Shown piece after piece: positions 10,606-57,458 of a stretch of DNA of 64,000 bases. The DNA lies in the IMG/VR virus record IMGVR_UViG_3300044640_001495, positions 289,124-353,123 of that record; one strand, 5' to 3'. The notes beneath the pieces were generated by a model. The model was given only the letters and a program-made list of their open reading frames with translations, made no database searches and was not told the DNA's origin. The translations under genes and the position numbers were made by a program. The stretch's first letter is position 1. Every line of letters starts with the position of its first letter.

Positions 10606-10714
10606 AAAAATATTAGATTTTATTTTATATCCGTGGCACAAGTATCAAGAACGCAAGGCATGGAAAAAACGTTTAGAAGAATTGCGTAAACGTGATCCAT
10701 TTATCTACAAATGA
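10598..10714 (+). CDS. small hypothetical protein (38 aa)
   Basis: Manual: MIKKILDFILYPWHKYQERKAWKKRLEELRKRDPFIYK; GGAG RBS; overlaps the primase stop and next start. Confidence 0.7.
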   Translation: MIKKILDFILYPWHKYQERKAWKKRLEELRKRDPFIYK

Positions 10715-11652
10715 TCATGTGGGGGGTAAATGCCCTTAATCATGGAAGTAGTCTTGCTGTATTCAAGGACGGCAGTCTGTGGTCCAATCAAGTGGGTTCT
10801 TCGGATGAATTAGACAGCAAAATAATTACCGATGCCCTGCATCTTGGAGCACCAGATCGTATCTTTTGGTACGAACGACCCTGGATAAAGAAAGCAAGAC
10901 AGGCATACGCAGGACAGTGGCATCGTGCCTTAGATATGAAGGTACTTCCACGTAGATATATGAAAGCGCAACATTATGCTCCGATCACTTATACACCGCA
11001 TCATGGTAGTCATGCAGCCGCAGGCTACTATACCAGTCCTTTTAATCATTGTGCTATTGTGGTACTCGACGCCATAGGTGAATTTGAATGTGCTACCATA
11101 TGGGAAGGCCTACACGGAGAAATGCGCAAAGTGTGGAGCAGAAGTTATCCTAATAGTCTAGGGCTATTCTATAGCGCATTTACTAACTTGTTAGGAATGA
11201 CTCCAATACAAGACGAATATCTATTGCAACAAATGGCTAAGAAGGGCGACCCACATCGTTATAAACATGATGTTCACAAATACATGAGCGGACTATTAAT
11301 CTCTGGTAAGAACATGCACAAGGGCATCCTCGATTGGCCGCATGACATTGGAAATGAACAAGACCGTTACGATATTGCTGCCGCAGTTCAACGAGTGTTT
11401 GAAGATCAAATCCGTATGGTTATGCTAGAAGCTAAGAAATTAGTCAACACTGACTGTCTAGTTTATATGGGCGGTTGTGCTATGAATTCAGATGCTAATA
11501 AACGATTTGTGGAACCTGCATTTAAGTACAGGTGGAGTTTACCTAATCCAGGAGATCCATCTAGTTCTATCGGAGCAGTCTTGTATCACACTAAACAACG
11601 AGAGTGGAAATACAACTTTGGTGTTGCAAAGCACCTAGCAATTAGTGTATAA
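10711..11652 (+). CDS. carbamoyltransferase (NodU/CmcH family), N-terminal Kae1-like domain only
   Basis: HHGSHAAAGYYTSPF, VLDAIGE, SLGLFYSAFT, DIAAAVQ, GGCAMN, PNPGDPSSSIGA; ends without the C-terminal YrdC-like domain. Confidence 0.85.
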   Translation: MIMWGVNALNHGSSLAVFKDGSLWSNQVGSSDELDSKIITDALHLGAPDRIFWYERPWIKKARQAYAGQWHRALDMKVLPRRYMKAQHYAPITYTPHHGSHAAAGYYTSPFNHCAIVVLDAIGEFECATIWEGLHGEMRKVWSRSYPNSLGLFYSAFTNLLGMTPIQDEYLLQQMAKKGDPHRYKHDVHKYMSGLLISGKNMHKGILDWPHDIGNEQDRYDIAAAVQRVFEDQIRMVMLEAKKLVNTDCLVYMGGCAMNSDANKRFVEPAFKYRWSLPNPGDPSSSIGAVLYHTKQREWKYNFGVAKHLAISV

Positions 11653-11660
11653 TAAAATAT

Positions 11661-12278
11661 ATGTTTTATTATAATAAGAAATATCAAACAGGTGATCAAT
11701 GGCTAATTGATACAGAATATACCAAGTATCAAGACCTATTGCCACTGGTTGAATCAAATCCCAATACTGAATACAGCAACGAAACTGTGGCGTTTAATGC
11801 TAGACAGTACCCATTGTGGAGTGATCCTGTGGTTGCACAGACAGTGAGACACAAACAATTTCTTGATAACTATGTTCAACACCCCGCTTGGGAAGAAGCA
11901 ACACATGGTATATTCGAATGGACCAAGCGACGATTAAAAAGAAATAAAATTGACCTAAATTTTGTGCCAACTATTTCATGGAGCATGGAATATGCCGCAG
12001 GCGGCTGGCAAAGCATGCATACACACGACAACGATTGTGTTACACAGATATTCTATTTAGATGGAGAAATAAACCAAGACCCAAATGTTAGTGCAAAAGA
12101 AAATGCATGGGGGTCTATGTATGCTTTTTTAACTAAAGGCGATAAACCATTATACAAATCATTTAGCAGTTGGGCAGGCCGTTGCATAATACTTCGTGGC
12201 GATATTTTCCACGGTGTTTATCCTATAAAAACATTGCCACGCAGAACAATTATTATGGATTATAAAGTGATACGATGA
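11661..12278 (+). CDS. putative 2OG-Fe(II) oxygenase-like protein
   Basis: HTHD...FHGVYP...RRTI pattern. Confidence 0.6.
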   Translation: MFYYNKKYQTGDQWLIDTEYTKYQDLLPLVESNPNTEYSNETVAFNARQYPLWSDPVVAQTVRHKQFLDNYVQHPAWEEATHGIFEWTKRRLKRNKIDLNFVPTISWSMEYAAGGWQSMHTHDNDCVTQIFYLDGEINQDPNVSAKENAWGSMYAFLTKGDKPLYKSFSSWAGRCIILRGDIFHGVYPIKTLPRRTIIMDYKVIR

Positions 12279-19543: not shown

Positions 19544-19652
19544 ATTGGTTAATGATGTATTTAGCTGTGAGATTTCAGTTGTTGATGGCGCAGCCTAGCG
19601 CAAAATTTTTTGCTGCGAAGCAGTAGCGCAGATTTTTTGCGATCAAGAGTGT

Positions 19653-19787
19653 CTAGTCATCCTCATCATCGTAGTCCTCATCATCTTCTTCATCATCCTC
19701 ATCGTAGTCGTCATAATCATCATCCTCATCGTAGTCGTCATAATCATCATCCTCATCATCGTCATAGAAGTGTGGAACTGTGCTCAT
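19653..19787 (-). CDS. 44-aa polyacidic (Asp/Glu/Tyr) peptide
   Basis: Manual: MSTVPHFYDDDEDDDYDDYDEDDDYDDYDEDDEEDDEDYDDEDD; GGGAG RBS; contains a 27-nt tandem duplication. Confidence 0.65.
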   Translation of the reverse strand: MSTVPHFYDDDEDDDYDDYDEDDDYDDYDEDDEEDDEDYDDEDD

Positions 19788-25890: not shown

Positions 25891-25984
25891 TGTCTGCTCC
25901 TAATGTGTTAGTGTAAATGTATTATAACATGCTTTTGGCTAGGTGTCAACCGCCGTTGGGCAGCGGGGCCTACGCCCCTACAGG

Positions 25985-26140
25985 TTAGTCTACGTAGTAG
26001 TCAACCGCTTGCACTAGCATGTTAAGCGGACTTTCCATATCCCCAAAGCATTCTAGCTCTGCTAGTTGCTCCCCGTCACAGCTTGCCTCTAACAGCATAG
26101 CTTCTACTTCCGCTAGCTTTGCAAGTATTGCTTCTTTCAT
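25985..26140 (-). CDS. small acidic early protein (51 aa)
   Basis: Manual: MKEAILAKLAEVEAMLLEASCDGEQLAELECFGDMESPLNMLVQAVDYYVD; AAGGAG RBS, promoter at 26168. Confidence 0.75.
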   Translation of the reverse strand: MKEAILAKLAEVEAMLLEASCDGEQLAELECFGDMESPLNMLVQAVDYYVD

Positions 26141-26211
26141 TTACTGCTCCTTTGTTGTTAAGTGTTAATTATAGCACACACTGTCCAAAATGTCAAGTGT
26201 GTGCTGTAGTA

Positions 26212-26589
26212 TTACAGCTCCATGCTCGCATAGCCGTCGTCTTGCATACCCTGCTCTGTAAACATAACGTCTGTACCTAGCAGTGTGCTAATCGCATCTA
26301 CAAAGCCGCTGTCTGTATACAGTCTCCAGCTGCCCTCGTACTCTGCATCGCCGTCTACGTTATAGCACACTGTAATGTGTATGCTACTGTCGCCGTCCAA
26401 TTCGTCCCACCATTGCTCGTGTATGTGTACGCTTGTAACTGTAACTGCCTCAATCTCGCAGTCCCATATGCTGTCGCCTGCTAGTTGCACTTCTATGTTG
26501 CAGTCGTATGTTGTGCTAATGCTGTCTTCGCTAGTGTCTGTAGTTGCCAGTGTCAGCTTGTCGCTAACTTCAAATTGTGTTGCTTGCAT
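26212..26589 (-). CDS. highly acidic, proline-free early protein
   Basis: 125 aa, D/E-rich, no Pro; GGAGCGAAT RBS, promoter at 26621. Confidence 0.8.
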   Translation of the reverse strand: MQATQFEVSDKLTLATTDTSEDSISTTYDCNIEVQLAGDSIWDCEIEAVTVTSVHIHEQWWDELDGDSSIHITVCYNVDGDAEYEGSWRLYTDSGFVDAISTLLGTDVMFTEQGMQDDGYASMEL

Positions 26590-26681
26590 AGTATTCGCTC
26601 CTAATGCTGTTTAAAAATGTATTATAGCACACCTTGTCCAAAATGTCAAGTGTGTGCGCAATAACCCTATGCGCTGTAGTG

Positions 26682-26825
26682 TTATTGTATAATTGTGTCG
26701 TCTAGCGCACAAGCTAACGCATTAAATGCGTTTTGTATTGCAACATGTTCGTCTAGTTCTGCTTCTTCTAGCACTGTTTGTAACTGTAACATTAAACTGT
26801 CTAATTTGCTTTTTGTATTTTGCAT
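26682..26825 (-). CDS. small acidic early protein (47 aa)
   Basis: Manual: MQNTKSKLDSLMLQLQTVLEEAELDEHVAIQNAFNALACALDDTIIQ; AAGGA RBS, promoter at 26852. Confidence 0.7.
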   Translation of the reverse strand: MQNTKSKLDSLMLQLQTVLEEAELDEHVAIQNAFNALACALDDTIIQ

Positions 26826-26904
26826 TGTGTTTCCTTTGTTGCTATGTTGTTATTATAGCGCACTTTGTCCAAAATGTCAAGTGCGCTATGTATAACCCTA
26901 CAGT

Positions 26905-27156
26905 TTAGTCAACAAATACAATGTTTGTAGTACGCAAACTTTGTTGCGCAGAAGCCACAGTGCGTTGCACCTCGTTTTGCAAGTTGTCTGCAAGTAAGTC
27001 CCCACTAACATAGTTGCATTTTGCTTGTGTAGGGAATATATACTTAATCTCGTCCCCCACCATTTTTTTGTGTACATTAAATGCAAACTGTACTTTATAT
27101 GCTTTTAATTTTTTGTTGTAAACTAGCTTTGCGTAGGCTATGCAATTTGTAAACAT
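26905..27156 (-). CDS. hypothetical early protein
   Basis: 83 aa; AAGGA RBS, promoter at 27186. Confidence 0.75.
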   Translation of the reverse strand: MFTNCIAYAKLVYNKKLKAYKVQFAFNVHKKMVGDEIKYIFPTQAKCNYVSGDLLADNLQNEVQRTVASAQQSLRTTNIVFVD

Positions 27157-27216
27157 TGTGTGTCCTTTTGTGTGTGTAAGCTGTAATTATAACGCACAAC
27201 GTCCAAATTGTCAACC

Positions 27217-27253
27217 AAAAAAAAGCATAACCCTACACCTAGCAGGGTTATGC
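27217..27253 (-). terminator. Rho-independent terminator, overlapping an operator-like palindrome
   Basis: GCATAACCCT-N9-AGGGTTATGC stem followed by T8 on the minus strand. Confidence 0.75.
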
Positions 27254-27257
27254 CAAA

Positions 27258-27672: not shown

Positions 27673-27867
27673 TCAACTGTTTGGTTTACCAAATTGCGGA
27701 ACAACTTGAATACTGACGCTTTCCTTCTCGTCTAAGGCGGCGATGAACTCATCGTCAAAGACCAGATCCTGCATGTTCAAGTCGATCATGTGTTCGACTC
27801 GATCCATATCGGGTCTGCCATCGCTGGCACACTCGATTGTGAATTTAAATTCATATTTCCTTGTCAT
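27673..27867 (-). CDS. hypothetical protein
   Basis: 64 aa, coupled to the upstream ORF. Confidence 0.65.
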   Translation of the reverse strand: MTRKYEFKFTIECASDGRPDMDRVEHMIDLNMQDLVFDDEFIAALDEKESVSIQVVPQFGKPNS

Positions 27868-28478
27868 TTTGTTCCCTCATTGGCTGCAACGCCATCCTTA
27901 ATCCACTCAGTAAGCTCTTCCTCTTGCTCTGCTTCGTATTCACGAATGCTTTCTGAGATAGCAAATGCTTCGTCCAGTTCAGGATGATCACGCTCAATGT
28001 CGTCGGCACTCATGCCTTCGAGATTGATCTCTTGATCACCATGCTCATCATAGGCGCCAGCATAGGCCATACCACCTTCGTAATACATGGCGTTGACACC
28101 AAAGCCCAACTCCACCAACTTGTCATAGGCAGCGACTGGAGGGCTCCACGCTGAGTCGAACGATGTGTGTAGCATCTTACCATCAGGGTGGATATCACTC
28201 TGACCATCGCCACCTACATCCCACTTGGTGCCCCATTCACCTACGCAGAAGTCATACCAGTTGCCGTAACCATACTTCTCGCGATTCTCAGCAGTCTTGC
28301 GTTCCAATTCTTTCTGCTCGTCACCGTCACCTAACGATCCTGCAACGATCTGCAGATCCGTTGGCACCGGAATGAACTCATTGAGGAACTCTCCACGATC
28401 AAGTGCTTCTTTAGCACGAAGGATCATTGCTGGGTCTTCGTGGGTGAGTGTCAGTGTGTTGTTGCACCAATTTGGCAT
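27864..28478 (-). CDS. DUF1281/YubB-like ferredoxin-fold protein
   Basis: MPNWCNN...WYDFC...WGTKWD...FDSAWSPP motif set. Confidence 0.75.
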   Translation of the reverse strand: MPNWCNNTLTLTHEDPAMILRAKEALDRGEFLNEFIPVPTDLQIVAGSLGDGDEQKELERKTAENREKYGYGNWYDFCVGEWGTKWDVGGDGQSDIHPDGKMLHTSFDSAWSPPVAAYDKLVELGFGVNAMYYEGGMAYAGAYDEHGDQEINLEGMSADDIERDHPELDEAFAISESIREYEAEQEEELTEWIKDGVAANEGTK

Positions 28479-30800: not shown

Positions 30801-30941
30801 CATATCTATCAACCTTTCTGTGTGTGTAAGTCTATATTATACAATCAATCTACCAAACCGTCAACCCCTAGATTACATGCACACGTAAGCAGCGGGGCCT
30901 ACTAGCAGTGTGGCTTTTTTGCCACACTGCCGGCACTCCAA

Positions 30942-38357: not shown

Positions 38358-38442
38358 TGGTAGGACCGACCGGAATCGAACCGGTATGCATTGCTGCGAG
38401 AGATTTTAAGTCTCTTGTGTCTACCTATTTCACCACGGTCCT
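38358..38442 (-). tRNA. tRNA-Leu(UAA)
   Basis: AGGACCG/CGGTCCT acceptor stem, AGAGA-CT-TAA-AA-TCTCT anticodon arm, long variable arm, TTCGATT T-loop, encoded CCA. Confidence 0.95.
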
Positions 38443-38468
38443 CAGTCTCGATGCTGCTGCAACGTTGT

Positions 38469-38545
38469 TGGCCAGTCCTACTGGATTCGAACCAGTGGCC
38501 TACAGCTTAGAAGGCTGTTGCTCTATCCAACTGAGCTAAGGACTG
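38469..38545 (-). tRNA. tRNA-Arg(UCU)
   Basis: CAGTCCT/AGGACTG acceptor stem, ACAGC-CT-TCT-AA-GCTGT, TTCGAAT, CCA. Confidence 0.95.
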
Positions 38546-38564
38546 CTGCTGTACTATTAATGTT

Positions 38565-38642
<78 letters not shown>

Positions 38643-39051: not shown

Positions 39052-39700
39052 CAGCGGGGCCAATGGCTGAAAAGCCCGAGGTTTTGGATGCAATAGGGGA
39101 TCAGGTTGGAACTCCCGTACCGTAGTCGAGTATAGTCTAATAGTGTAGGGTCTAGAGTTAGCTGTATATAACAGTAGTACGCCTTCTGGGACTTCATGCA
39201 TACTATATTTAAGTGTAGGCATATACGTATACATATACACTGTATACGCACAATCCAGCAGCGGGGCCTATTGTGGGTCTACGGTTGGCACTGTACAGGG
39301 ATTGGTTGCAGCAGATCACCGTGATTCTAGAGTGGATAAATACTGGCAGCACCTATTCTAGACAGTGAAAACTACTGTAGATGAGTCGTTTGAGTAGGGT
39401 TTGGCTGCAATTTACAAGAGTTTGAGCACGGCCAGGTCTATGGCTTATGAGGCATGCAAAAAATTCACACAATTCAACACTTTATTGCACTTTATCACAC
39501 ACATTAGATAACCATACCCCACACAGCGGGGCCTATATGCATGATCACCCCCACCAACCGATCAGTAAATCACACTTTTTTGCATTTACTGTTCATTCTA
39601 TAATTCTCTAGAGCTGCCGCAGGCTTCTTGACCCTAGCCACTCTACACACTTATACATACGCATATACGTATACACGACTTGATATCCAGCAGCGGGGCC
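39052..39700 (+). repeat. clustered direct repeats CAGCGGGGCC in a long non-coding strand-switch region
   Basis: Copies at 39052, 39259, 39524, 39691 (also 25961 and 30890); two are preceded by GCATATACGTATAC and ATCCAG. Confidence 0.8.
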
Positions 39701-40489: not shown

Positions 40490-41104
40490 ATGCAAATTGT
40501 TCACGATCACAACTACGTCAGAGTCATTGATCATGTGTTATCCGCTGATCACTGTGCTCGTTTATGCACCTTGTTTGAAGCATGTTATGCTCAGCACACA
40601 CGTCGAGACAGTGAGTGGGTCTCACTGACAGAATTGGCTTTGACAGCACCCGATAACATGACCAGTCGTAATCCCTTGCACAGGCTTCGAGCAGAACAGG
40701 ATACTGTATGGCCCGAAGTCTTGGAACCTCTGGCTCTGCGTCTGCGGGTCTTGGCAGAACAGTATGGTCAAACATGGGGTACTTGGCAGGGCATATCATT
40801 TTTGCCCCAAGATTACAGCATGGAAGGCATGCGAATCAAATGCTATAGACCCCACTCAGGTGATCAATTTCGCACACACGTGGATGTGGCCAATCGTGCC
40901 AGCAGCAGCCGTTTTCTCAGCTTTTTGCTCTATCTCAATGACTCAGATGCAGGCACTCATTTTGCACGGGACTCATACACTGTTCAAGCTCAAGAGGGTC
41001 GTGTGGTCTTATTTCCACCTTTATGGACACACCCACACGCAGGCCTGGAACCCAAAGGTGATACCACCAAATACATACTGTCAACTTATCTACACTATCT
41101 ATGA
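40490..41104 (+). CDS. 2OG-Fe(II) oxygenase (prolyl-4-hydroxylase-like)
   Basis: FRTHVD, FLLYLND, GTHF, FPPLWTHPHAG, KYIL. Confidence 0.88.
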   Translation: MQIVHDHNYVRVIDHVLSADHCARLCTLFEACYAQHTRRDSEWVSLTELALTAPDNMTSRNPLHRLRAEQDTVWPEVLEPLALRLRVLAEQYGQTWGTWQGISFLPQDYSMEGMRIKCYRPHSGDQFRTHVDVANRASSSRFLSFLLYLNDSDAGTHFARDSYTVQAQEGRVVLFPPLWTHPHAGLEPKGDTTKYILSTYLHYL

Positions 41105-41171
41105 CTCAACTGCAAATTTTGCTGAATATCTACACAAACAGTACTTTGAACAGTGATTGGTAAATATTAAC

Positions 41172-41561
41172 ATGAACAAACTCTTTGCAATTTTATCTCT
41201 AGTCATGCTATCGGGTTGTGCTTCCGTTATCAGCTGGATACCCAGTTTTAACGACGTCAATCAGTCAGCCAAGATTGTGGATGTACGCATGGCAGTGGAC
41301 TCACTTGATTGTGCGCGAGCACAACACCCCCAGGCTCTAACCATACAGCGTGAACTACGTTGGTTTGAACTCTATTCAGAATCAGCGGGCATACGCAATC
41401 AAGATGTTATACGTGTGATCAAGCCCATGCAGGCCACAGTGGGTGAGTTTGTGACTCGTACAGAGAAACAGGATGCCAGCAGGGTCTATTGTGATCTAAA
41501 GAAACGAGCCATGCAAGAACAGGCAGCTAGGGCTGCTGGTGTAATTCTAGGAAGATTCTAA
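41172..41561 (+). CDS. putative lipoprotein
   Basis: MNKLFAILSLVMLSGC lipobox. Confidence 0.75.
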   Translation: MNKLFAILSLVMLSGCASVISWIPSFNDVNQSAKIVDVRMAVDSLDCARAQHPQALTIQRELRWFELYSESAGIRNQDVIRVIKPMQATVGEFVTRTEKQDASRVYCDLKKRAMQEQAARAAGVILGRF

Positions 41562-41797
41562 TGTCAATTGAAACGCTAAGAACGCTAACAGAACATCAAG
41601 ACCTAGCCATTTCAGCTAGGGCTCGTTATGTGCTTGAGCTCACCCAGGCAGTAAACACCAATCAGATCACAGCCGAGGAATATCAAGAACTCTGCAGAGA
41701 TGTGGCCCGTATGGACACCCTGGATAGAGAATGTCAAGACCTAGAACTAAAAACCGCACTGGTCATGGCTGTGTATGCTGTGGCCCAACTGAGATAA
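41561..41797 (+). CDS. hypothetical protein
   Basis: 78 aa, TAATG-coupled. Confidence 0.7.
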   Translation: MSIETLRTLTEHQDLAISARARYVLELTQAVNTNQITAEEYQELCRDVARMDTLDRECQDLELKTALVMAVYAVAQLR

Positions 41798-41801
41798 TCA
41801 T

Positions 41802-42332
41802 ATGCGTATCAACGAAATCCTCACTGAAAACATATTCACCACAGACTATCACAAGGTCATGCAAGCGGTAGCTGAATTGTACAAGAACCACTATGACATC
41901 AATGTGTGGGAAAATGCCGAAGCACACGACGAAGCTGCCAAGGTACTACTCAAGGTACACCCCACTCAAGAGGAACTGGACTACATCATTTCAAGTAGTC
42001 AACTGCCAGAACGCTTTATGGATCTAGACTTTCCCATCAATGACGATCTCATGTTCAACGGTTCAGGGGCATCAACAGATGATGTCATCGAGGGTGACCT
42101 AGATGAAGCCCTAGACTCAGACCTAGATGAGGAGCCTGCATCGAGAGCATTATGTACCAGCGGCAAACCCAACAACGCTTTGGGTGCCAGTCAATTGGCA
42201 TCATGCAAGAGCCAGGGCTATCGTGGTCGACACGGTGATAAAAGCCACAAGATTGGCAACGAGCGCACCACTGTAAAAGGCAAAAAGATCAAGGGCAAGA
42301 AGTACGGCGGCCCCTTACCAGACTGGAGTTAA
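41802..42332 (+). CDS. hypothetical protein (acidic N-half, basic C-tail)
   Basis: 176-aa ORF. Confidence 0.75.
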   Translation: MRINEILTENIFTTDYHKVMQAVAELYKNHYDINVWENAEAHDEAAKVLLKVHPTQEELDYIISSSQLPERFMDLDFPINDDLMFNGSGASTDDVIEGDLDEALDSDLDEEPASRALCTSGKPNNALGASQLASCKSQGYRGRHGDKSHKIGNERTTVKGKKIKGKKYGGPLPDWS

Positions 42333-42335
42333 CAC

Positions 42336-42893
42336 ATGGTCGAAGTCAAGACCGGGGATCTATTGATTGCACCCCCGAGCATGCCAGATCCAAGATTTAA
42401 CCAATCTGTGATGTTTCTCACACATTACAACTCACGTGGGGCCTATGCCCTGTGCATGAACAGGCCCACAGAACACACCCTCAACACCATAGTGGAGCCC
42501 CTGGGGCTGAAGTTTAAAATAGATCACCCTCTGTATTGGGGTGGCCCAGTGAGCCTCAGCACTGTGTGGATGTTGCATGACAGTGATTGGTCAGTGAACA
42601 ACACCATGCGTATCAATGATCAATGGAGCATTACCAGCCATGAAGAAATGTTCCATCATCTCAGCAAGGGGGTATGGCCCAATAGATTCCGTATCATGAT
42701 AGGCCATGCCAGTTGGGATGCAGGACAACTAGATGCTGAGATAGAGGGTCAAGAACCCTGGAGCCACCGCAGCAGTTGGCTGTGTGTGAAGCGGCCCGAT
42801 CCCAATTGGCTGTTTGATCTAGATGCAGAACAGCTATGGAGCAGCAGTTGCAGTCTATGCGGGCAACAGGCTGTGGATTCATGGATGGTGTAA
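42336..42893 (+). CDS. YqgE/AlgH family protein
   Basis: GDLLIAPPSMPDPRF..SV, MNRP, YWGGPV, GHASWDAGQLDAEI. Confidence 0.9.
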   Translation: MVEVKTGDLLIAPPSMPDPRFNQSVMFLTHYNSRGAYALCMNRPTEHTLNTIVEPLGLKFKIDHPLYWGGPVSLSTVWMLHDSDWSVNNTMRINDQWSITSHEEMFHHLSKGVWPNRFRIMIGHASWDAGQLDAEIEGQEPWSHRSSWLCVKRPDPNWLFDLDAEQLWSSSCSLCGQQAVDSWMV

Positions 42894-43798
42894 GGCTGGT
42901 TCAAAGCACGAGGGCTGGGAGTAAATTTTATGTAAATTGGTGGTTGATGAATCACTGCACATGGGCCTGCAGCTATTGCAATGAAATTATACGCAAGGGC
43001 AACATTGATCTACCCTATCTCAACGACTGCAAACAGTTCATAGACAGCACAGTGGCCTATGCTACCAATCAAGGCAAAACTGCCAGCATAGAGTTTACAG
43101 GGGGTGAAGTAACAGAATGGACTGACTTTCTAGAGCTGTTGGCCCACGCTCATGGTCAAGGATGCGAAACACAGTTTAGAACCAATGCCAATGTGAGCAT
43201 TGATCTTTGGCATGAATACATGGCTGTGACCCACAGTGTGTTGATTGAGCATCACCCTGAGCATACTACCAGTGCGCACTTTTTATTGGCTGTGGCTGCG
43301 GCAGTGGACGCAGGGGTGGCTGTGACTGTGAACCTAAACATGCTCAAAGACACGTGGGCCAGCAGCCAGCAGTTGTATGATCGCATATACACCAAATGGC
43401 CACAGATACGCATGAACAAACGCATGTTGTTTGAAGACCCTGTGTTCAATACCACCCCACAACGCTATACCACCAACCAGACCATGGAATTGAAAAGACA
43501 GCACGGTGACATCAAGATCACACAAGGTAACAAGATTGAATACACTGACTATCAGACCATGGTGTTAGAGGGCAGTAATGTGTTCAAAGACTATGACTGC
43601 TGGGCTGGCATGGAACAGATAGTGGTAGATGCTTGGGGCAGAGTCTATAGAGGGCACTGTAGACAAGGCGGATTCATGGGCAATATCAAAGAGCATAACA
43701 TAGTTTGGCCCACCCACCCTAGAACTTGCAAGTTAGACATATGCAGAAACAGCTTTGACATACTGGCCACTAAATCAATTCAACTCACGAAGATTTGA
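42881..43798 (+). CDS. radical SAM protein with C-terminal SPASM/twitch-like cysteines
   Basis: CTWACSYC, FTGGE, CWAG...VYRGHC...C...C. Confidence 0.88.
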   Translation: MDGVRLVQSTRAGSKFYVNWWLMNHCTWACSYCNEIIRKGNIDLPYLNDCKQFIDSTVAYATNQGKTASIEFTGGEVTEWTDFLELLAHAHGQGCETQFRTNANVSIDLWHEYMAVTHSVLIEHHPEHTTSAHFLLAVAAAVDAGVAVTVNLNMLKDTWASSQQLYDRIYTKWPQIRMNKRMLFEDPVFNTTPQRYTTNQTMELKRQHGDIKITQGNKIEYTDYQTMVLEGSNVFKDYDCWAGMEQIVVDAWGRVYRGHCRQGGFMGNIKEHNIVWPTHPRTCKLDICRNSFDILATKSIQLTKI

Positions 43799-50872: not shown

Positions 50873-51937
50873 TTAACCAAAATCAAACAGAGATTCAAAT
50901 TGATTATCTGCCTGCTTTATTGCACCATAGTTACCTAGTGCAACTGTGGCATCATGCACCTCACGTGGCACAAACAGTCTATCCATGTACTTTGGAATCT
51001 GTTGATGTGTCATACCAATGTCCTTACCAAAATGTAAACCTAGAGCCTTCTGCTCCGCATTAGCTGGTCTTCTCACAGCGCAGACACAGACATAATCCAA
51101 TTTGGCAAAATAGTCATATAGATCCTGAGGTTGATATCCGTATTGAGCACATTGCTTTGGAACAATCTCAACCTGCACACTAGGCCTGCATCTCTTGATA
51201 GTTTCGTCAGCGCCTTCTATCACAAATAGCTCGCTGCCTTCCACATCAATCTTGATAACATCAACGTCATCAAATTTGTAGCTGTCTATGGTTCTTGCAG
51301 GAACATTGACCACGTGTTGAGACTTTTTAATCTGTTTGTCGTTGTAGACAGCAAAGTTGTGACCCCCGTGTTCTGGATGATCCTGAATGCCAATAGTACC
51401 AATATTTCTATTAGTAAGTGCCACTTCGTGAACCGTGATGTTACCAGCTATGTTCATACTCTGAGGAATCCCCTTCCAGACAAACCAACCTACAGCTTGG
51501 TTAGGATCTCGATGGATTGCACCATTCCATACATTACCTTGCCAATAGATACCATGCAGATTGCTCTGCTGAGCAATGGCAATATTTGCTTTGAGCATGG
51601 TCAATGTGGTAGGAGTGGGCTCAAATGATTCCACATCATCGGCCCATTCTGCGTAGGCAATGGTGTTATTACCAATGTTAGCACCCACGTCAATGATGCG
51701 ACGTGCTGTTGGATAGATGGATCTTATTAGTCTAGAATTGTTGCCCTGATAGTAAACATTGACTCCACTAAATCTAGGACCTTGCAGATTATCCCAGGCC
51801 AATAGCCAGTAGCAACGTCCAAACTTGTTTATCACTAAACGAAATTGGGCATCGTTAAAAAGTCCGCTGGGTTCTGGAAATCCGAATAGAGTTTGAAACT
51901 CTTGGGGGGTGATGGTTGCTGTAATAAGTTGCGGCAT
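50873..51937 (-). CDS. FkbM-family methyltransferase
   Basis: IIDVGANIG, SFEP, IKIDVEGSE. Confidence 0.9.
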   Translation of the reverse strand: MPQLITATITPQEFQTLFGFPEPSGLFNDAQFRLVINKFGRCYWLLAWDNLQGPRFSGVNVYYQGNNSRLIRSIYPTARRIIDVGANIGNNTIAYAEWADDVESFEPTPTTLTMLKANIAIAQQSNLHGIYWQGNVWNGAIHRDPNQAVGWFVWKGIPQSMNIAGNITVHEVALTNRNIGTIGIQDHPEHGGHNFAVYNDKQIKKSQHVVNVPARTIDSYKFDDVDVIKIDVEGSELFVIEGADETIKRCRPSVQVEIVPKQCAQYGYQPQDLYDYFAKLDYVCVCAVRRPANAEQKALGLHFGKDIGMTHQQIPKYMDRLFVPREVHDATVALGNYGAIKQADNQFESLFDFG

Positions 51938-52042
51938 AATATTTCTCCTTTATATCAATTTTCGCAATGCGTCAACAATACCGTACTGTATTGTAATGTT
52001 CGCAAGAGTATTTACCTAGTGTACTACACTAGGAAAAATAAA

Positions 52043-52555
52043 TCAACCTAAATAATCTGCCCAGCTAGGATGCTGTAGATGATACCCTCGGACCCTACGT
52101 TTGGCCACAAGGTCCCAAAATGTAGGCTTGTAGGGTGTGACTTTTGGTTTCATCTTGCCCACATGTGCCGCCTTCTTGTAGTTGCAGCTCTTGCAGGCAG
52201 TGGTTGAGTTTTCCCAAGTGGTCTTGCCGCCCTTGCTCACAGGCAGCACATGATCCAAAGTGGCCAAAGATTCCGCCACTTCTATTCCACAGTATTGACA
52301 GGCATAGGCGTCACGCAGAAATATATTGCGTTTGCTCAGCCTCATAGTGTGTTTGGGTTTTTGATAAGAATTCAACATGATCACAGCAGGCACGCGAGTT
52401 TCCCAACGTGCAGATCGCACGATCCAATCTTCGTGCCATTCCAAAACCTTAACCTTGTCCAACACAATGTAACGAATGGCTTCCTGCCAGTCTATGGTGC
52501 TGAGGGGTAATAGGCTTAATGGCTGCATGTCTGCGTTAAGTACTAAGGTGGTCAT
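52043..52555 (-). CDS. HNH endonuclease
   Basis: TLVLNAD, RD...CQYCG, TLDHVLPVSKGG..TWEN...AC..CN..K. Confidence 0.92.
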   Translation of the reverse strand: MTTLVLNADMQPLSLLPLSTIDWQEAIRYIVLDKVKVLEWHEDWIVRSARWETRVPAVIMLNSYQKPKHTMRLSKRNIFLRDAYACQYCGIEVAESLATLDHVLPVSKGGKTTWENSTTACKSCNYKKAAHVGKMKPKVTPYKPTFWDLVAKRRVRGYHLQHPSWADYLG

Positions 52556-52698
52556 AATACGTGTATTTAATCAAAGAACAACTAGTGTACAATCAAAACT
52601 ATAATTAGTCAATGTTTTTTTAGATAACTAAGATTGAAGTTGACCTAGACAGGGTTAGCTGCTATACTTAGATTTCTTATTAATTAAAAGGATTTACG

Positions 52699-53286
52699 AT
52701 GAATTTAGTACCAATGGTCATTGAGTCAACTTCCAAAGGGGAACGGGCCTATGACATCTACAGCCGCTTGCTCAAAGAACGTATTATTATGTTGAACGGC
52801 CCTGTAGAAGATATGATGGCAAATACTATTGTGGCACAATTGTTATTTTTGGAATCAGAAAATCCAGACAAAGAGATTTCACTGTTCATTAACAGTCCCG
52901 GTGGTGTTATCACAAGCGGTATGAGCATCTACGATACCATGCAGTTTATCAAATGTGATGTGGCTACCTATGTTATGGGACAGGCCTGTTCAATGGGTTC
53001 ATTCCTAGCACAAGCAGGTACGGCAGGCAAGCGTTATATGTTGCCCTATGCCCGCCACATGATTCATCAGCCCAGCGGCGGTGCTCGTGGCATGCAGAGC
53101 GACATTGAAATTCAATACAAAGAAATCACCAAGATGAAAGACATCTTGACCAAACTGTACGTCAAGCACAATACCAAAGGTAAGACCTATGCTGAGTTTG
53201 AACGTGACATGGATCGTGATACGTTTATGTCAGCAGAAGAAGCACTAGAATATGGACTCATTGACAAAATCATTGAGAAAAGATAA
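52699..53286 (+). CDS. clpP: ATP-dependent Clp protease proteolytic subunit
   Basis: [40 protein letters not shown]; promoter TTGACC-N17-TATACT at about 52640. Confidence 0.97.
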
Positions 53287-53684
53287 TGACACAACTACAA
53301 GGTAAACAAGACAAAGGGTGGGGCTACGAAATTATATGGGCCACCAATGACAAGTACGCAGGCAAAATCTTAGTATTTGAAAAGGTAGGTGCCAAGTTTA
53401 GTATGCACTTTCACAAAGAAAAAGATGAAACTTGGTTTGTAAACGCAGGCGAGTTCAAGTTAATCTGGTGCGACACTACCACTGCCACCTACAAAGAACA
53501 AATTCTCAAAGAAGGTGACACGTGGCGCAATCCGCCAATGATGCCGCATCAGTTGATTGCACTCAAACCCAACTCAATGGTATTTGAAGTCAGCACAGCA
53601 GACTCAGTAGAAGACAATTACAGAATCATTCCAGGAGACAGTCAAGTTGCAGCCGTTAAACCAACCGAAGAACAACCAACCTAA
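53286..53684 (+). CDS. cupin-domain protein (sugar isomerase-like)
   Basis: KGWGYE, SMHFH..KDETW, PHQL, EVST. Confidence 0.8.
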   Translation: MTQLQGKQDKGWGYEIIWATNDKYAGKILVFEKVGAKFSMHFHKEKDETWFVNAGEFKLIWCDTTTATYKEQILKEGDTWRNPPMMPHQLIALKPNSMVFEVSTADSVEDNYRIIPGDSQVAAVKPTEEQPT

Positions 53685-54267
53685 GATATCTTGGGTAGGT
53701 GGAGAGTTCCGCACAAAATGTGTGGTAGGGCTTGATCGTGATGGAGTAATCAACCGAGACCTAGGCACCTACTGCTTCAAGGTTGAGGACTTTGACCCCA
53801 TTCCAGGCAGTATTGACGCTATAGCTGAACTCAGGCGTAAAGGCTATAAGATCACAGTGATCACTGATCAAGGTGGCATTGAAAAAGGTCTTTACACCCA
53901 ACAAGATGTGGACACTGTGCATGAGCACATGCTGAAACTGTTAGGCGAAGCAGGCTGCTTTTCAATTGACGGCATCTACTACAGTGCCAGCAGTCGTAGA
54001 GAAGATCCGTTTGCCAAACCCAATGTGGGCATGTTTAAAAAATGTGAAGCTGACGTTAAGGATATCAAATTCAAAGGCGGCTACTATGTAGGCGACAAGA
54101 TGAAAGATCTTAAAGCAGCCATGAATATAGGTGCTCGACCAGTGTTGGTAAGGACTGGCTATGGCTTAGAAACTGAAAAAGAATTACAAAAATTTACCTA
54201 TAGAAAGATCAAACAGCGCACAATTATATTTGACAACCTAGCACAGTTTGTGGAGTCGCTTGCATGA
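53647..54267 (+). CDS. gmhB: D,D-heptose 1,7-bisphosphate phosphatase
   Basis: LDRDGVIN, ITDQGGI, KPNVGM, VGDKMKD, LVRTGYG; start uncertain. Confidence 0.88.
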   Translation: MQPLNQPKNNQPKISWVGGEFRTKCVVGLDRDGVINRDLGTYCFKVEDFDPIPGSIDAIAELRRKGYKITVITDQGGIEKGLYTQQDVDTVHEHMLKLLGEAGCFSIDGIYYSASSRREDPFAKPNVGMFKKCEADVKDIKFKGGYYVGDKMKDLKAAMNIGARPVLVRTGYGLETEKELQKFTYRKIKQRTIIFDNLAQFVESLA

Positions 54268-54668
54268 CACGGGTTGTAGTTAATGGAACCTTTGACATTA
54301 TACATTTAGGGCATTTGAGACTGTTAGATTATGCTAGAAGTTTGCCCAATAGCTACGTGTTAGTTTTAGCAGATAGTGATCGTAGAATAAAACAATTGAA
54401 AGGCAATGATAGACCGATCAACAACGAATACGAACGTTGTAGTTTGTTGTTTGCTCTAAAGTCAGTAGATCGTGTAGAAACATTTGATTCCGATGAAGAG
54501 TTAATTAAATTGATCAAAGACTTCGAACCCGATGTTATGGTTAAAGGTAGCGACTATCGTGGTAAGCCTATTATAGGTGCAGAATACTGCAAAGAGATAA
54601 AATTTTATGACAGACTTGGCAACTACTCAACCACAAACAAAATTCAAGATATTGCTCATAGGCGATAA
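54264..54668 (+). CDS. heptose-1-phosphate adenylyltransferase (HldE/RfaE domain II)
   Basis: NGTFDIIHLGH, LKGNDRP, VKGSDY, YSTT. Confidence 0.88.
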   Translation: MTRVVVNGTFDIIHLGHLRLLDYARSLPNSYVLVLADSDRRIKQLKGNDRPINNEYERCSLLFALKSVDRVETFDSDEELIKLIKDFEPDVMVKGSDYRGKPIIGAEYCKEIKFYDRLGNYSTTNKIQDIAHRR

Positions 54669-55368
54669 CTGTAAAGACATTTACCAGTACGGGACTATTG
54701 ATAGGCTAAGCCCAGAAGCACCTGTGCCTGTATTTGTGCCTACATATGCAGAAGAAAGTGATGGTATGGCAGGTAATGTGTTTAACAATCTAGAGGCATT
54801 GGGCTGTGAAGTAAACTATCTTTTCGGCGAAACAAGTACAAAGACTAGATTAATCGATCAACGTAGTCAACAACAGATTGTGCGTATTGACAATGACATT
54901 GTATCTGATCCGTTGACATTCGAAACAGATATTCCCAATGTTTATGATGCTGTTGTAGTCAGTGATTACAATAAAGGAACAGTTAGCTACGAACTTATAG
55001 AAGAACTGATCGCACTGAGTATTCCTATCTTTATCGATACTAAGAAAATAGATCTAGAACGTATGCAAGGTGCATGGGTAAAGATCAATGAATTGGAATA
55101 CAGTAAAATCAAAAGCGAGTGCAGTGGGTTAATTGTTACACGTGGTGCCAAAGGTGCGGATGCTGTTCATCACAAGTATAGTTCTAAAGCACCAAGAGTA
55201 GAAGTTGTAGATGTTACAGGCGCAGGAGATACCTTTCTTGCCGCACTTGTCTACAACTACCTACATACCAAAGATATAAAAAGAGCCATGGACTTTGCCA
55301 ACCAAGCTGCCGCTATCACAGTTCAGCATGTTGGATGTTATGCTCCTACGATGGAAGAAATACTATGA
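54607..55368 (+). CDS. heptose-7-phosphate kinase (HldE/RfaE domain I, PfkB family)
   Basis: RLSPEAPVPV, GMAGNV, SDYNKG, DVTGAGDTF. Confidence 0.88.
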   Translation: MTDLATTQPQTKFKILLIGDNCKDIYQYGTIDRLSPEAPVPVFVPTYAEESDGMAGNVFNNLEALGCEVNYLFGETSTKTRLIDQRSQQQIVRIDNDIVSDPLTFETDIPNVYDAVVVSDYNKGTVSYELIEELIALSIPIFIDTKKIDLERMQGAWVKINELEYSKIKSECSGLIVTRGAKGADAVHHKYSSKAPRVEVVDVTGAGDTFLAALVYNYLHTKDIKRAMDFANQAAAITVQHVGCYAPTMEEIL

Positions 55369-56240
55369 TTGTATTAACAGGTGCCGGCGGCTTTATTGGC
55401 AGCGTGATGTTGGGCTATCTTAACAAGCAGGGTATCTCTGATGTTGTCTTGTTTGATGATCTGCTAAATGAAACGCAGTATCGCAATCTTGTGGGCAAGC
55501 GGTTCAAAAGCATACATCCGCACTCTACATTTGAAAAGACCACATTCAATCCCAAAGACATTGACGCAGTGATTCACATTGGCGCCAACTCTAGCACACT
55601 GGAACGCAACTGGCCATCTATCTATAAAAGTAATGTGCTGTCAACTCGTATGTGGAATGCCTTTTGTTTGGAACATGCCATCCCTTTTATCTTTACCAGT
55701 TCAGCCGCAGTCTATGGCAATGGTACAGGACCACTCAATCAATATGCTTTCAGCAAACAGGTCAGTGAACAAGAGATTACAGGAGTGGTATTGAGATTGT
55801 TCAACGTCTACGGACCCAACGAGTATCACAAGGGTCGTATGGCCAGTACCATAATGCATTGGTACAATCAAATACAAACAGACGGCAAGATCAACATATT
55901 TGAAAACAGCATGAACTATCGTAGAGACTTCATATGGGTAGAGGATGTGGCCAGTACCATCTATCACTTTGTGAAAAACTACACACCCGGCATCTATGAT
56001 CTAGGCACAGGAGCCAGTGTGGACTTTGACAGTATTGCCAACATTGTGATCAATGAATGTGGTACAGGTGTCAAATGCTCTATCCCCATGCCCGATGATC
56101 TCAAAGCACAGTATCAACTGGATACCAAAGCTGATACTAGCAAGCTGGCGCTTGCGGGAGTCGATGTTGATTTATTCTACGAACCCTGGCAGGGCATTAA
56201 AGAATACTGCCAGTATCTAAAGACTAGTAGGTTCTATTAA
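55365..56240 (+). CDS. hldD: ADP-L-glycero-D-manno-heptose 6-epimerase
   Basis: [51 protein letters not shown]. Confidence 0.92.
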
Positions 56241-57426: not shown

Positions 57427-57458
57427 AGTAATGTTATTTAACCGATAAATATACAACT

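What the first reader, a model, noticed from the sequence alone, without database searches (positions are those of the whole stretch)
26031..26950. 920-bp early-gene island whose template strand has no GA or GG dinucleotide
Seen: from 26031 to 26950 all of about 170 G residues on the + strand (manual count) are followed by C or T. Over 25990-27240 the only exceptions I find are at 26028 (GGA), 26951 (GA), 27032 (GGGA) and 27136 (GG); two of these coincide with Pro codons. Flanking DNA is full of GA/GG, and the opposite strand is not depleted. The constraint spans four minus-strand genes and their promoters. The 125-aa and 47-aa proteins contain no Pro (CCN), Ser is encoded as AGY, and the local operator copy reads GTAGTGTTA instead of GTAGGGTTA. 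Established: phage DNA hypermodification can be dinucleotide-specific (preQ0 in phage CAjan at GA and GGC), and several cytidine deaminases prefer TC/CC. Inference: these are first-expressed genes that must stay free of a target motif. Either the phage's own bulky modification at GR blocks host RNA polymerase on the template strand, or a host or phage enzyme attacks YC in the non-template strand or the mRNA. The small acidic products would then be candidates for relieving that block. I know of no description of such a strand-specific motif-free island.
Basis: partly seen in the sequence, partly recalled or inferred. Interest (0 to 1): 0.95.

Follow-up and report, generated by a model that had tools for sequence, protein, structure and literature searches.

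The report
Phage early-gene cassette lacking pyrimidine-C
A roughly 1-kb block of small, acidic early genes in an uncultured T4-like giant phage has lost every pyrimidine-then-C step from its message strand. Relatives keep the same block clean under strong selection, which suggests these messages must stay invisible to something that reads that two-letter signal, most plausibly the host terminator Rho.

Summary
On the + strand, positions 26030-26950 have no GA or GG among 172 G (chance about 1e-46). Equivalently, the minus (coding) strand has no TC or CC, written YC below. The next longest such run in the window is 134 nt.

The same YC-free block, 430-1341 nt long, recurs on the coding strand in 24 distinct relatives from IMG/VR. 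Over 1.56 Mb of related loci, no other dinucleotide class exceeds 195 nt.

The block is a shuffled cassette of small, proline-free, mostly very acidic proteins of unknown fold. Each usually has its own consensus sigma-70 promoter. The layout resembles the promoter/stem-loop cassettes (PeSLs) of T4-like phages.

Selection acts site by site. In the 125-aa gene, 25% of possible point changes would create YC. None of 65 variable sites among five orthologues does.

My best explanation (about 0.35) is that the transcripts are stripped of the 5'-YC ligand of Rho's primary binding site. The main rival (about 0.3) is an undescribed YC-specific RNase or RNA modifier.

I found no published description of such an island. 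Interest is high.

The parts
27224..27254 (-). Strong intrinsic terminator (13-bp stem TAACCCTGC...GTAGGGTTA plus T8). It insulates the island from upstream early transcription.
   Evidence: best terminator-like site on the minus strand in 20-32 kb; sequence.
27186..27214 (-). First island promoter (perfect TTGACA-N17-TATAAT), free of YC.
26905..27156 (-). Leader gene f83: 83 aa, basic (pI 9.4). It is strongly but not completely depleted, with 5 YC against about 19 expected. One residual site is the Pro codon of the FPTQ motif (27032-34).
   Evidence: AF2 model pLDDT 90, with no significant PDB match.
26030..26950 (-). Core island: 922-nt gap between flanking sites with no TC or CC on the coding strand (no GA/GG on the + strand).
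26852..26880 (-). Second promoter. It is bracketed by an 8-bp inverted repeat made only of purine-C steps (TAGCGCAC 26888-26881 / GTGCGCTA 26863-26856). Upstream, only the 3' half (GTAGGGTTAT, 26901-26892) of the terminator palindrome remains.
26682..26825 (-). f47: 47-aa acidic protein (pI 4.1), no Pro, YC = 0. Two independent assemblies break inside this gene, which marks a cassette junction.
26661..26685 (-). Degenerate terminator-type hairpin, ATAACACTA / TAGGGTTAT. The 5' arm carries CAC instead of CCC, which gives one mismatch, and there is no T-run.
26621..26649 (-). Third promoter, with flanking inverted repeat GCACAC/GTGTGC.
26212..26589 (-). f125: 125-aa acidic protein (pI 4.05), no Pro, YC = 0 against about 24 expected. 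It belongs to a large superfamily with invariant Y91, F96, E112, G114, M115, Q116 and S122 and nearly invariant T92, D93 and Q113, i.e. a conserved YTD..F...EQGMQ motif.
   Evidence: AF2 pLDDT 89.5, with no PDB match by fold or sequence.
26168..26196 (-). Fourth promoter, with a 9-bp flanking inverted repeat AGCACACAC/GTGTGTGCT.
25985..26140 (-). f51: 51-aa acidic helical protein. The island ends 43 nt before its stop codon, at a Pro codon (26028-30).
25961..25978 (-). Downstream boundary: GC hairpin (GGGGC-GTAG-GCCCC) without a T-run, overlapping the recurrent motif GGCCCCGCTG (25961-25970). The next early promoter (25921-25949) follows.

Best explanation
The island is a mobile, PeSL-like cassette of immediate-early take-over or anti-defence genes in a T4-like jumbo phage. 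Its transcripts have been purged, by strong site-by-site purifying selection, of every 5'-pyrimidine-C-3' step.

The only established bacterial reader of that dinucleotide is Rho. Each of its six primary-binding-site clefts holds one YC of the nascent RNA. I therefore propose that these RNAs are 'Rho-blind'. Rho cannot load on them, so they are made in full even when transcription runs ahead of translation. That would be the case in the first moments of infection, when about 25 consensus promoters fire at once and ribosomes are still held on host mRNA, or when translation is impaired.

Shown:
- the absolute, conserved, coding-strand-specific exclusion of YC;
- synonymous recoding and avoidance of proline;
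- the cassette architecture;
- the strong acidity of most products.

Inferred:
- that the selective agent acts on RNA;
- that the agent is Rho;
- that the genes are the first expressed.
For: (1) The exclusion is exactly YC. Both TC and CC are zero. AC and GC are enriched (1.39x and 1.22x), and T content is unchanged. This matches Rho's stated primary-binding-site specificity: 5'-YC clefts (PMC12360218), one YC per cleft and up to six per hexamer (PMC5314796), and 'up to six CC or UC' (PMC13323073). Removing single YCs lowers Rho termination and ATPase stimulation in vitro (PMC5314796).

(2) There is a precedent that avoiding Rho shapes coding-strand composition (PMC13323073).

(3) The constraint ignores reading frame. 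It covers UTRs, intergenic spacers and internal promoters that read-through transcripts cross.

(4) YC is tolerated just upstream of the first transcription start. The last YC lies at -18 to -106 from the start of the nearest promoter in 14 of 17 run starts, and inside the promoter spacer at four of them. This fits a constraint on the transcribed unit.

(5) YC is allowed again in a translationally coupled downstream membrane-protein gene and in the 3' hairpin. A polar, 5'-to-3' acting factor would tolerate that.

(6) The phage's ClpP is closest to Gamma- and Betaproteobacteria, groups I know to have Rho.

(7) The phage is T4-like (gp13, gp15, sheath, UvsX-like and terminase genes). From my own knowledge, in T4 Rho limits early transcription when translation lags.

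(8) The feature is conserved and under selection.
Against: Rho binding is cooperative over several YCs, so one or two isolated YCs per 100 nt should be almost harmless. Yet strict islands hold zero YC over 0.9-1.3 kb in many lineages, and f125 orthologues are bimodal (0, or at least 4). That fits a per-site hit such as a cut, a lesion or an edit better than an avidity threshold.

About 25 neighbouring early genes have the same kind of promoter and similar size but normal YC content. The Rho model does not by itself explain why only this cassette is protected.

Neither the host nor its Rho is identified. No expression data exist.
Confidence: 0.35

Rival explanations
1. An undescribed enzyme cuts or chemically modifies single-stranded RNA at every YC. 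It could be a host defence effector or the phage's own host-shutoff nuclease. Only YC-free messages survive. The cassette would then encode the proteins that must be made while the enzyme is active, possibly including its inhibitor.
For: - Zero tolerance: no YC over 0.9-1.3 kb in many lineages, none of 65 variable sites creates one, and C is never seen after a pyrimidine.
- A hairpin arm is sacrificed to avoid CC.
- There is a precedent for a defence enzyme with a dinucleotide RNA target: CmdT ADP-ribosylates GA in mRNA (table in PMC12945103).
- From my own knowledge, ACA-less mRNAs escape MazF, and HEPN RNases show dinucleotide preferences.
- The products are small acidic proteins typical of inhibitors.
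Against: - No YC-specific RNase or RNA modifier turned up in the literature searches.
- No RNase-like domain was found among the ORFs of the 64-kb window that were scanned with Pfam.
- The leader gene f83 and the coupled downstream gene carry YC and would be hit.
- All other phage messages would be vulnerable.
Confidence: 0.3
2. A cytosine deaminase or other base-modifying enzyme with a YC preference (APOBEC-, SsdA- or DarT-like) attacks the single-stranded non-template DNA strand, or R-loops, of heavily transcribed early genes. The island has been cleared of targets by selection, by the mutagenesis itself, or by both.
For: - The strand specificity follows the direction of transcription.
- From my own knowledge, TC and CC are the classic contexts of ssDNA cytidine deaminases.
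- DarT2 targets TNTC/TCTN in ssDNA.
Against: - There is no C-to-T footprint. TT is only 1.25x and CT 0.8x, while AC and GC are enriched, so C has been relocated rather than lost.
- Neighbouring early genes have equally dense consensus promoters but normal YC.
- No deaminase-type anti-phage defence acting on ssDNA was found in the literature search.
Confidence: 0.1
3. One reading: the phage modifies G in GA/GG (deazaguanine-type or similar). A modified template strand hinders host RNA polymerase, so the first genes keep an unmodified template.
For: - Motif-specific G modification is real: dPreQ0 at GA plus GGC in CAjan and strictly at GA in iggy (PMC7544227 and PMC10484667).
- A template-strand block would give the per-site, polar behaviour seen here.
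- The window carries unassigned 2OG-Fe oxygenases, a carbamoyltransferase and a radical-SAM gene, and it sits next to many sugar genes.
Against: - No DpdA/TGT, QueC/D/E, FolE or TET-JBP match was found among the 40 ORFs of at least 150 aa scanned with Pfam, or in the precomputed Pfam labels of the roughly 30 kb beside the window.
- All other early genes are transcribed from GR-rich templates.
- Iggy has 97% of its GA sites modified, yet its longest GA-free run is 289 nt, at the non-coding right end, and its longest GR-free run is 77 nt.
- About 260 kb of the genome was not examined.
Confidence: 0.1
4. The exclusion is a by-product: selection for unstructured, highly translatable messages, for particular amino-acid content, or plain chance or artefact.
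For: The messages are purine-rich (A 34%, G 25%) and the proteins are acidic.
Against: - The predicted folding energy of island RNA is ordinary once corrected for G+C (residual +0.5 kcal, against an sd of 5.8).
- Non-coding spacers are equally clean.
- The same proteins written with the phage's normal codon usage would carry about 24 YC (f125), with a minimum of 11 in 2000 simulations.
- The feature was assembled independently in many samples.
Confidence: 0.03

Closest known systems
PeSL (promoter-early / stem-loop) cassettes of the hyperplastic regions of T4-like phages (PMC2839356, PMC4122927)
   Same: Small ORFan genes are each flanked by a composite terminator-type stem-loop plus an early sigma-70 promoter. 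The modules are shuffled between close relatives. The phage here has T4-type structural and recombination genes.
   Different: I know of no dinucleotide exclusion reported for PeSL cassettes. Here the stem-loop arms inside the island are degraded to avoid CC. The internal promoters carry their own inverted repeats made only of purine-C steps. The phage is a 353-kb uncultured jumbo phage with no close cultured relative.
Rho avoidance as a driver of coding-strand composition ('purine bias driven by runaway transcription', PMC13323073)
   Same: There is coding-strand-specific selection against the sequences that Rho recognises in nascent RNA. UC and CC are the recognised dinucleotides.
   Different: The published bias is genome-wide, mild and statistical, a general excess of purines. 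Here the exclusion is local (about 1 kb), absolute, and restricted to YC. U and purine-C steps are kept or enriched.
Motif-free messages that escape sequence-specific mRNA-targeting toxins or defences (ACA-less mRNAs and MazF, from my own knowledge; CmdT acting on GA in mRNA, 10.1101/2024.02.24.581662)
   Same: The logic is the same: a message is immune because it lacks the short target motif. A dinucleotide can be the target of a defence enzyme.
   Different: No YC-specific enzyme is known. The target set here is a two-dinucleotide class. The exclusion covers a multi-gene cassette, including its spacers.
Dinucleotide-specific 7-deazaguanine DNA modification (CAjan GA/GGC; iggy GA)
   Same: The motif class (G followed by A or G) is nearly the complement-strand reading of the island.
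   Different: No pathway genes were found in the sequence examined. Iggy shows no comparable island. That modification is on both strands and genome-wide.
Immediate-early small acidic anti-defence proteins such as T7 Ocr and T4 Dmd (own knowledge)
   Same: They are small, very acidic products expressed from strong host-type early promoters at the start of infection.
   Different: There is no sequence or fold similarity to solved structures. The function here is untested.

Membership tests
PeSL-type mobile early-gene cassettes (T4-like hyperplastic regions) | Composite motif of a terminator-type stem-loop next to an early sigma-70 promoter, flanking small ORFs | tested here: met
   A full hairpin plus T8 plus promoter lies at 27254-27186. 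Degenerate copies precede the promoters at 26880 and 26649.
PeSL-type mobile early-gene cassettes (T4-like hyperplastic regions) | Modular gain, loss or replacement of the flanked ORFs between close relatives | tested here: met
   About 20 families occur in different orders in 24 islands. The same 47-aa gene is followed by f125 in the window but by f153 in L024. Two assemblies break at that junction.
PeSL-type mobile early-gene cassettes (T4-like hyperplastic regions) | Host phage is a T4-type myovirus | tested here: inconclusive
   Pfam labels T4 gp13, gp15, sheath, RecA/UvsX-like and terminase appear on the same contig family. There is no nucleotide or close protein match to cultured phages.
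Rho-avoiding coding sequence | Depletion of UC and CC on the transcript strand only | tested here: met
   Zero YC on the coding strand; 103 YC on the other strand within the island.
Rho-avoiding coding sequence | Expression becomes Rho-sensitive when YC is restored; the RNA fails to activate Rho | not testable with these tools
   This needs Rho ATPase and termination assays, or bicyclomycin reporter tests.
Rho-avoiding coding sequence | Host possesses Rho | tested here: inconclusive
   The ClpP gene's best matches are Gamma- and Betaproteobacteria at 58-66% identity, with no cyanobacteria among the 80 loci kept. The host is not identified.
7-deazaguanine (DpdA) modified phage with a GA/GG motif | DpdA transglycosylase and preQ0 synthesis genes (FolE, QueD, QueE, QueC) | tested here: not met
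   No match among the 40 window ORFs of at least 150 aa that were scanned with Pfam, or in the precomputed Pfam labels of the roughly 30 kb adjacent. The remaining roughly 260 kb was not examined.
7-deazaguanine (DpdA) modified phage with a GA/GG motif | Motif-free template strand in early genes of a phage with a proven GA modification | tested here: not met
   In iggy (MN029011) the longest GA-free run is 289 nt, at the non-coding end, and the longest GR-free run is 77 nt.
Deaminase hypermutation footprint (APOBEC-, DddA- or SsdA-like) | Loss of YC balanced by a gain of YT, with a net loss of C | tested here: not met
   TT is 1.25x, CT 0.8x, AC 1.39x and GC 1.22x. C falls only from 21.9% to 17.6%.
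Motif-free mRNA escaping a sequence-specific RNase | A known nuclease with the matching (YC) specificity in host or phage | tested here: not met
   None was found by the literature searches or by the Pfam and PHROG scans of the window ORFs tested. Absence of evidence only.
DNA-mimic anti-restriction proteins (Ocr/ArdA type) | Recognisable fold or sequence similarity | tested here: not met
   f125 is a confident model (pLDDT 89.5), but its best PDB Foldseek hit has E = 0.17 and the profile search against PDB gives E = 1.3. Acidity alone is met (pI 4.05).

The most novel reading that the evidence does not exclude
A previously unknown enzyme, a host immune effector or a phage shut-off factor, cuts or modifies RNA (or exposed single-stranded DNA) at every pyrimidine-C step. 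A widespread group of freshwater jumbo phages answers it with a mobile arsenal of YC-free genes that can still be expressed under attack. The island would then be the genomic fingerprint of a new class of dinucleotide-specific nucleic-acid immunity, and its acidic products would be the inhibitors.
Probability: 0.3. Interest if true: 0.95.

Novelty: new variant of a known kind. Interest (0 to 1): 0.85.

Why it matters
Avoidance of short motifs is a known way for viruses to escape nucleic-acid readers: restriction sites, CpG and ZAP, ACA and MazF, purine bias and Rho. An absolute, strand-specific ban on a whole dinucleotide class is not known. Here it is confined to a mobile cassette of early genes, and it is maintained across proteins that have diverged to under 40% identity.

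If Rho is the agent, this is the first natural 'Rho-proof' expression cassette. It would show that Rho is a front-line barrier to phage immediate-early expression, and it would give a simple design rule for termination-resistant transcripts.

If Rho is not the agent, the island points to an undiscovered YC-specific defence or shut-off enzyme, and to about 20 families of candidate inhibitors.

Either way the feature offers a cheap, alignment-free search key for finding immediate-early or anti-defence genes in uncultured phages: long coding-strand runs that lack one dinucleotide class.

Tried and rejected
- Megablast of the island and of 25 kb of the window against GenBank phages gave no match. 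A third query failed on length.
- tblastn of f125 against phages gave no match. The 204-aa neighbour gave only distant hits in Puniceispirillum and Roseobacter phages. There is therefore no cultured model.
- PHROGs and Pfam on the island proteins and on about 20 neighbouring small early proteins gave nothing informative.
- The PDB sequence profile for f125 and Foldseek for f125 and f83 gave no significant hit. f83 gives only a scatter of RNase-H-like-fold hits at E = 0.3-2, which I do not trust.
- Rfam on the whole window found only three tRNAs.
- 'Unstructured mRNA' is rejected. Island RNA folds as well as its neighbours once G+C is accounted for.
- 'Transcription-driven mutation' is rejected as the sole cause. 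Promoter density is similar in normal-YC neighbours, and there is no C-to-T footprint.
- Explanations by codon usage or tRNA supply are rejected, because spacers and codon junctions are equally clean.
- UV or oxidative damage avoidance was considered. The template strand is rich in dipyrimidines (30% of steps), so photodamage avoidance is not at work. This rests on inference and my own knowledge.
- Symmetric dsDNA enzymes (restriction, DddA-like) are rejected, because only one strand is depleted.
- Control: T5, including its first-step-transfer region, has a longest YC-free run of 118 nt.
- Walking the contig with the look-up of encoding contigs ran into sugar-metabolism and structural modules. 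I stopped with about 260 kb still unseen.
Full report
**1.

Between 26031 and 26950 the + strand has 172 G. Of these, 75 are followed by C, 97 by T, and none by A or G. The GR-free gap is 922 nt (26030-26950).

G is followed by a purine 46% of the time across the window, so the chance of this is about 1e-46. The next longest GR-free run is 134 nt, and no other two-dinucleotide class gives a gap above 206 nt.

Read on the minus strand, which carries the genes, the statement becomes: no C is preceded by a pyrimidine, so there is no TC and no CC ('YC'). The other strand has 103 YC in the same interval. A 500-nt profile shows a sharp step from 6-12 YC per 100 nt in the surrounding early region to 0.2-0.4 in the island.

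**2. Where it sits**

The window is the last 64 kb of a 353,123-bp metagenomic contig. The phage has no nucleotide match among GenBank phages.

Contigs that share exact proteins with that contig carry genes labelled T4 gp13, gp15, sheath, RecA/UvsX-like and large terminase. This is therefore an uncultured T4-like jumbo myovirus. Its ClpP is closest to those of Gamma- and Betaproteobacteria.

The minus strand from about 21 to 39 kb is an early region with about 25 perfect TTGACA-N17-TATAAT promoters.

The island's layout, in order of transcription, is as follows:
- the strongest intrinsic terminator of the region (27254-27224, 13 bp plus T8);
- four promoter-plus-Shine-Dalgarno-plus-small-gene units: f83, f47, f125 and f51;
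- a GC hairpin without a T-run, overlapping a recurrent GGCCCCGCTG motif.

**3. It is conserved, which is the key new fact**

Searches of IMG/VR with f125 and with the neighbouring 204-aa gene returned 95 loci, from contigs of up to 365 kb.

On the coding strand, 24 distinct YC-free runs of 430-1341 nt were found (for example L052 1341, L024 1327, L015 1288, L067 1272). GR-free runs on that strand never exceed 134 nt. Over the 1.56 Mb of loci, the longest run for YC is 1341 nt. The best of the other 47 dinucleotide classes reaches 195 nt. T5, including its first-step-transfer region and its famous early promoters, reaches only 118 nt.

**4. What the islands contain**

They are variable cassettes drawn from about 20 families of small proteins (36-160 aa). 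Most genes have their own consensus promoter.

A typical cassette starts with the basic 83-aa leader gene, which keeps 2-5 YC, one of them in the Pro codon of a conserved FP(T/V)Q motif. It often ends at a GC hairpin, or at a 70-aa membrane-protein gene (weak, sub-threshold match to DUF6552) that overlaps the last island gene and has normal YC.

The same gene can have different neighbours in different genomes. Two assemblies break at the same point inside the 47-aa gene. This architecture is that of the PeSL cassettes, which mediate modular shuffling in T4-like phages (PMC2839356, PMC4122927).

Forty-five distinct YC = 0 proteins (3,711 aa) share these properties:
- no proline at all, against 3.3% in neighbouring early proteins;
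- serine written only as AGY (197 against 0);
- a median pI of 4.06.

f125, f107, f112 and f153 form one superfamily with a conserved YTD..F...EQGMQ motif. It has 1,258 metagenomic homologues, none of them named. AlphaFold models of f125 (pLDDT 89.5) and f83 (pLDDT 90.2) are confident but match nothing in the PDB.

**5. Selection, not decay**

C falls only from 21.9% to 17.6%. AC and GC rise 1.39- and 1.22-fold, and CT falls. C has therefore been moved into purine-C contexts rather than deaminated away.

Written with the phage's usual codons, f125 would carry about 24 YC, with a minimum of 11 in 2,000 simulations.

In f125, 25% of all possible point changes, and 25% of synonymous ones, would create a YC. 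Among 65 variable sites in five YC-free orthologues, none does (0.75^65 is about 8e-9). At variable sites that follow a pyrimidine, C is never seen (A 15, G 13, T 6). At sites that follow a purine, C is the commonest state (32).

Homologues outside strict islands do carry synonymous YC, such as TTC, ACC, CTC and TCC. The constraint therefore belongs to the genomic context or lineage, not to the protein.

Even regulatory structure gives way. The 5' arm of the terminator-type palindrome reads TAACACTAC instead of TAACCCTAC, leaving a mismatch, or is missing altogether. The three internal promoters instead carry 6-9-bp inverted repeats built only from purine-C steps.

**6. Level of action**

Only a strand-asymmetric process fits. 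That means the transcript, the exposed non-template strand, or the template strand.

Run starts cluster just upstream of a promoter. The last YC lies at -18 to -106 from the transcription start of the nearest promoter in 14 of 17 run starts, and inside the spacer in four of them. Internal promoters, which are crossed by read-through transcripts, are always clean. Downstream, YC returns in the 3' hairpin or in a translationally coupled gene. This points to the transcription unit as the object of selection, and to a factor whose effect is polar.

Promoter density in the island is no higher than in its normal-YC neighbours. Heavy transcription alone is therefore not the cause.

**7. Mechanism**

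*Rho.* The only established bacterial reader of 5'-YC in RNA is Rho. Its six primary-binding clefts each hold one YC. Single YC mutations lower termination and ATPase stimulation. Avoidance of Rho has recently been shown to shape coding-strand composition (PMC12360218, PMC5314796, PMC13323073).

The island's pattern matches that specificity exactly: YC at zero, purine-C steps enriched, U untouched. I therefore rank 'Rho-blind immediate-early transcripts' first, at about 0.35.

It has two weaknesses. Rho's avidity-type binding does not predict zero tolerance. It also does not explain why only this cassette is protected.

*An unknown YC-specific RNase or RNA modifier (about 0.3).* This explains zero tolerance better, and it has a conceptual precedent in CmdT, which marks GA in mRNA. 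No such enzyme is known, however.

*An ssDNA deaminase or ADP-ribosyltransferase on the non-template strand (about 0.1).* This lacks a C-to-T footprint.

The evidence against it here:
- No pathway genes were found among the window ORFs scanned with Pfam, or in the Pfam labels of the roughly 30 kb beside the window.
- All other early genes are read from GR-rich templates.
- The GA-modifying phage iggy has no such island.

*By-product explanations.* These are rejected.

**8. Novelty**

Literature searches on dinucleotide depletion in phage early genes, Rho and phage early transcription, anti-phage deaminases and motif-free phage transcripts found nothing that describes this.

I class it as a new and extreme variant of motif avoidance. 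There is a substantial chance that it marks an unknown dinucleotide-specific enzyme.

**9. Limits**

- The host is unknown.
- There are no expression or modification data.
- About 260 kb of the genome was not examined.
- The choice between an RNA-level, non-template-strand and template-strand agent cannot be made from sequence alone.

Noticed in passing
window 25961-25970, 30890-30899, 39052-39061, 39259-39268, 39524-39533, 39691-39700 (all minus strand): There are six exact copies of GGCCCCGCTG, against about 1.5 hits expected at up to one mismatch. One marks the downstream end of the island, and L024 and L015 carry it at the same place. Four are clustered at the head of the early region (39.0-39.7 kb). 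It could be a regulator site, a processing site or a termination site.
   Followed up: partly
window 24623, 26662/26676, 26893, 27228/27242, 36675/36689, 37800: A recurrent palindrome, ATAACCCTAC...GTAGGGTTAT, forms terminator-type hairpins next to early promoters (PeSL-like). Inside the island only the G-rich arm survives intact.
   Followed up: partly
window 58890-59310 (+): Imperfect 9/18/27/90-nt tandem repeats encode collagen-like Gly-X-Y repeats, probably a fibre protein. They cause the long T-class-free runs seen in the dinucleotide scan.
   Followed up: partly
window 19650-19776 (-): A stretch of GAT/GAG/GAC/TAC codons encodes a long poly-acidic (D/E/Y) N-terminal region of a minus-strand gene.
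   Followed up: no
window 38358-38642 (-): A cluster of three tRNA genes (Leu-TAA, Arg-TCT, Met-CAT) lies inside the early region.
   Followed up: no
window 10711-12278, 40490-43798, 50873-57456; L188 1-9517: There are many auxiliary genes:
- a carbamoyltransferase-N plus a weak, sub-threshold 2OG-Fe oxygenase match beside the replication genes;
- another 2OG oxygenase, an AlgH-like gene and a radical-SAM gene (a sub-threshold match);
- an FkbM methyltransferase;
- a heptose-like sugar set (HAD phosphatase, PfkB kinase, epimerase) and an aminotransferase;
- ClpP, BI-1 and a D-Ala-D-Ala carboxypeptidase.

Just upstream of the window is a block of glycosyltransferases and DegT. Whether any of these modify DNA is unknown.
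   Followed up: partly
L001 and L004 (window about 26744): Contigs from two different metagenomes end at the same base inside the 47-aa gene. This is consistent with strain-level cassette swapping that breaks assemblies there.
   Followed up: partly
whole window: Coding strands throughout carry fewer YC (6-9 per 100 nt) than non-coding strands (12-16 per 100 nt). The island is the extreme of a genome-wide coding-strand bias.
   Followed up: partly
window 27864-28478 (-): A 204-aa protein starting MPNWCNNT is conserved in more than 200 IMG/VR contigs and distantly in Puniceispirillum and Roseobacter phages. It has no Pfam family. It is a useful anchor gene for this phage group.
   Followed up: partly
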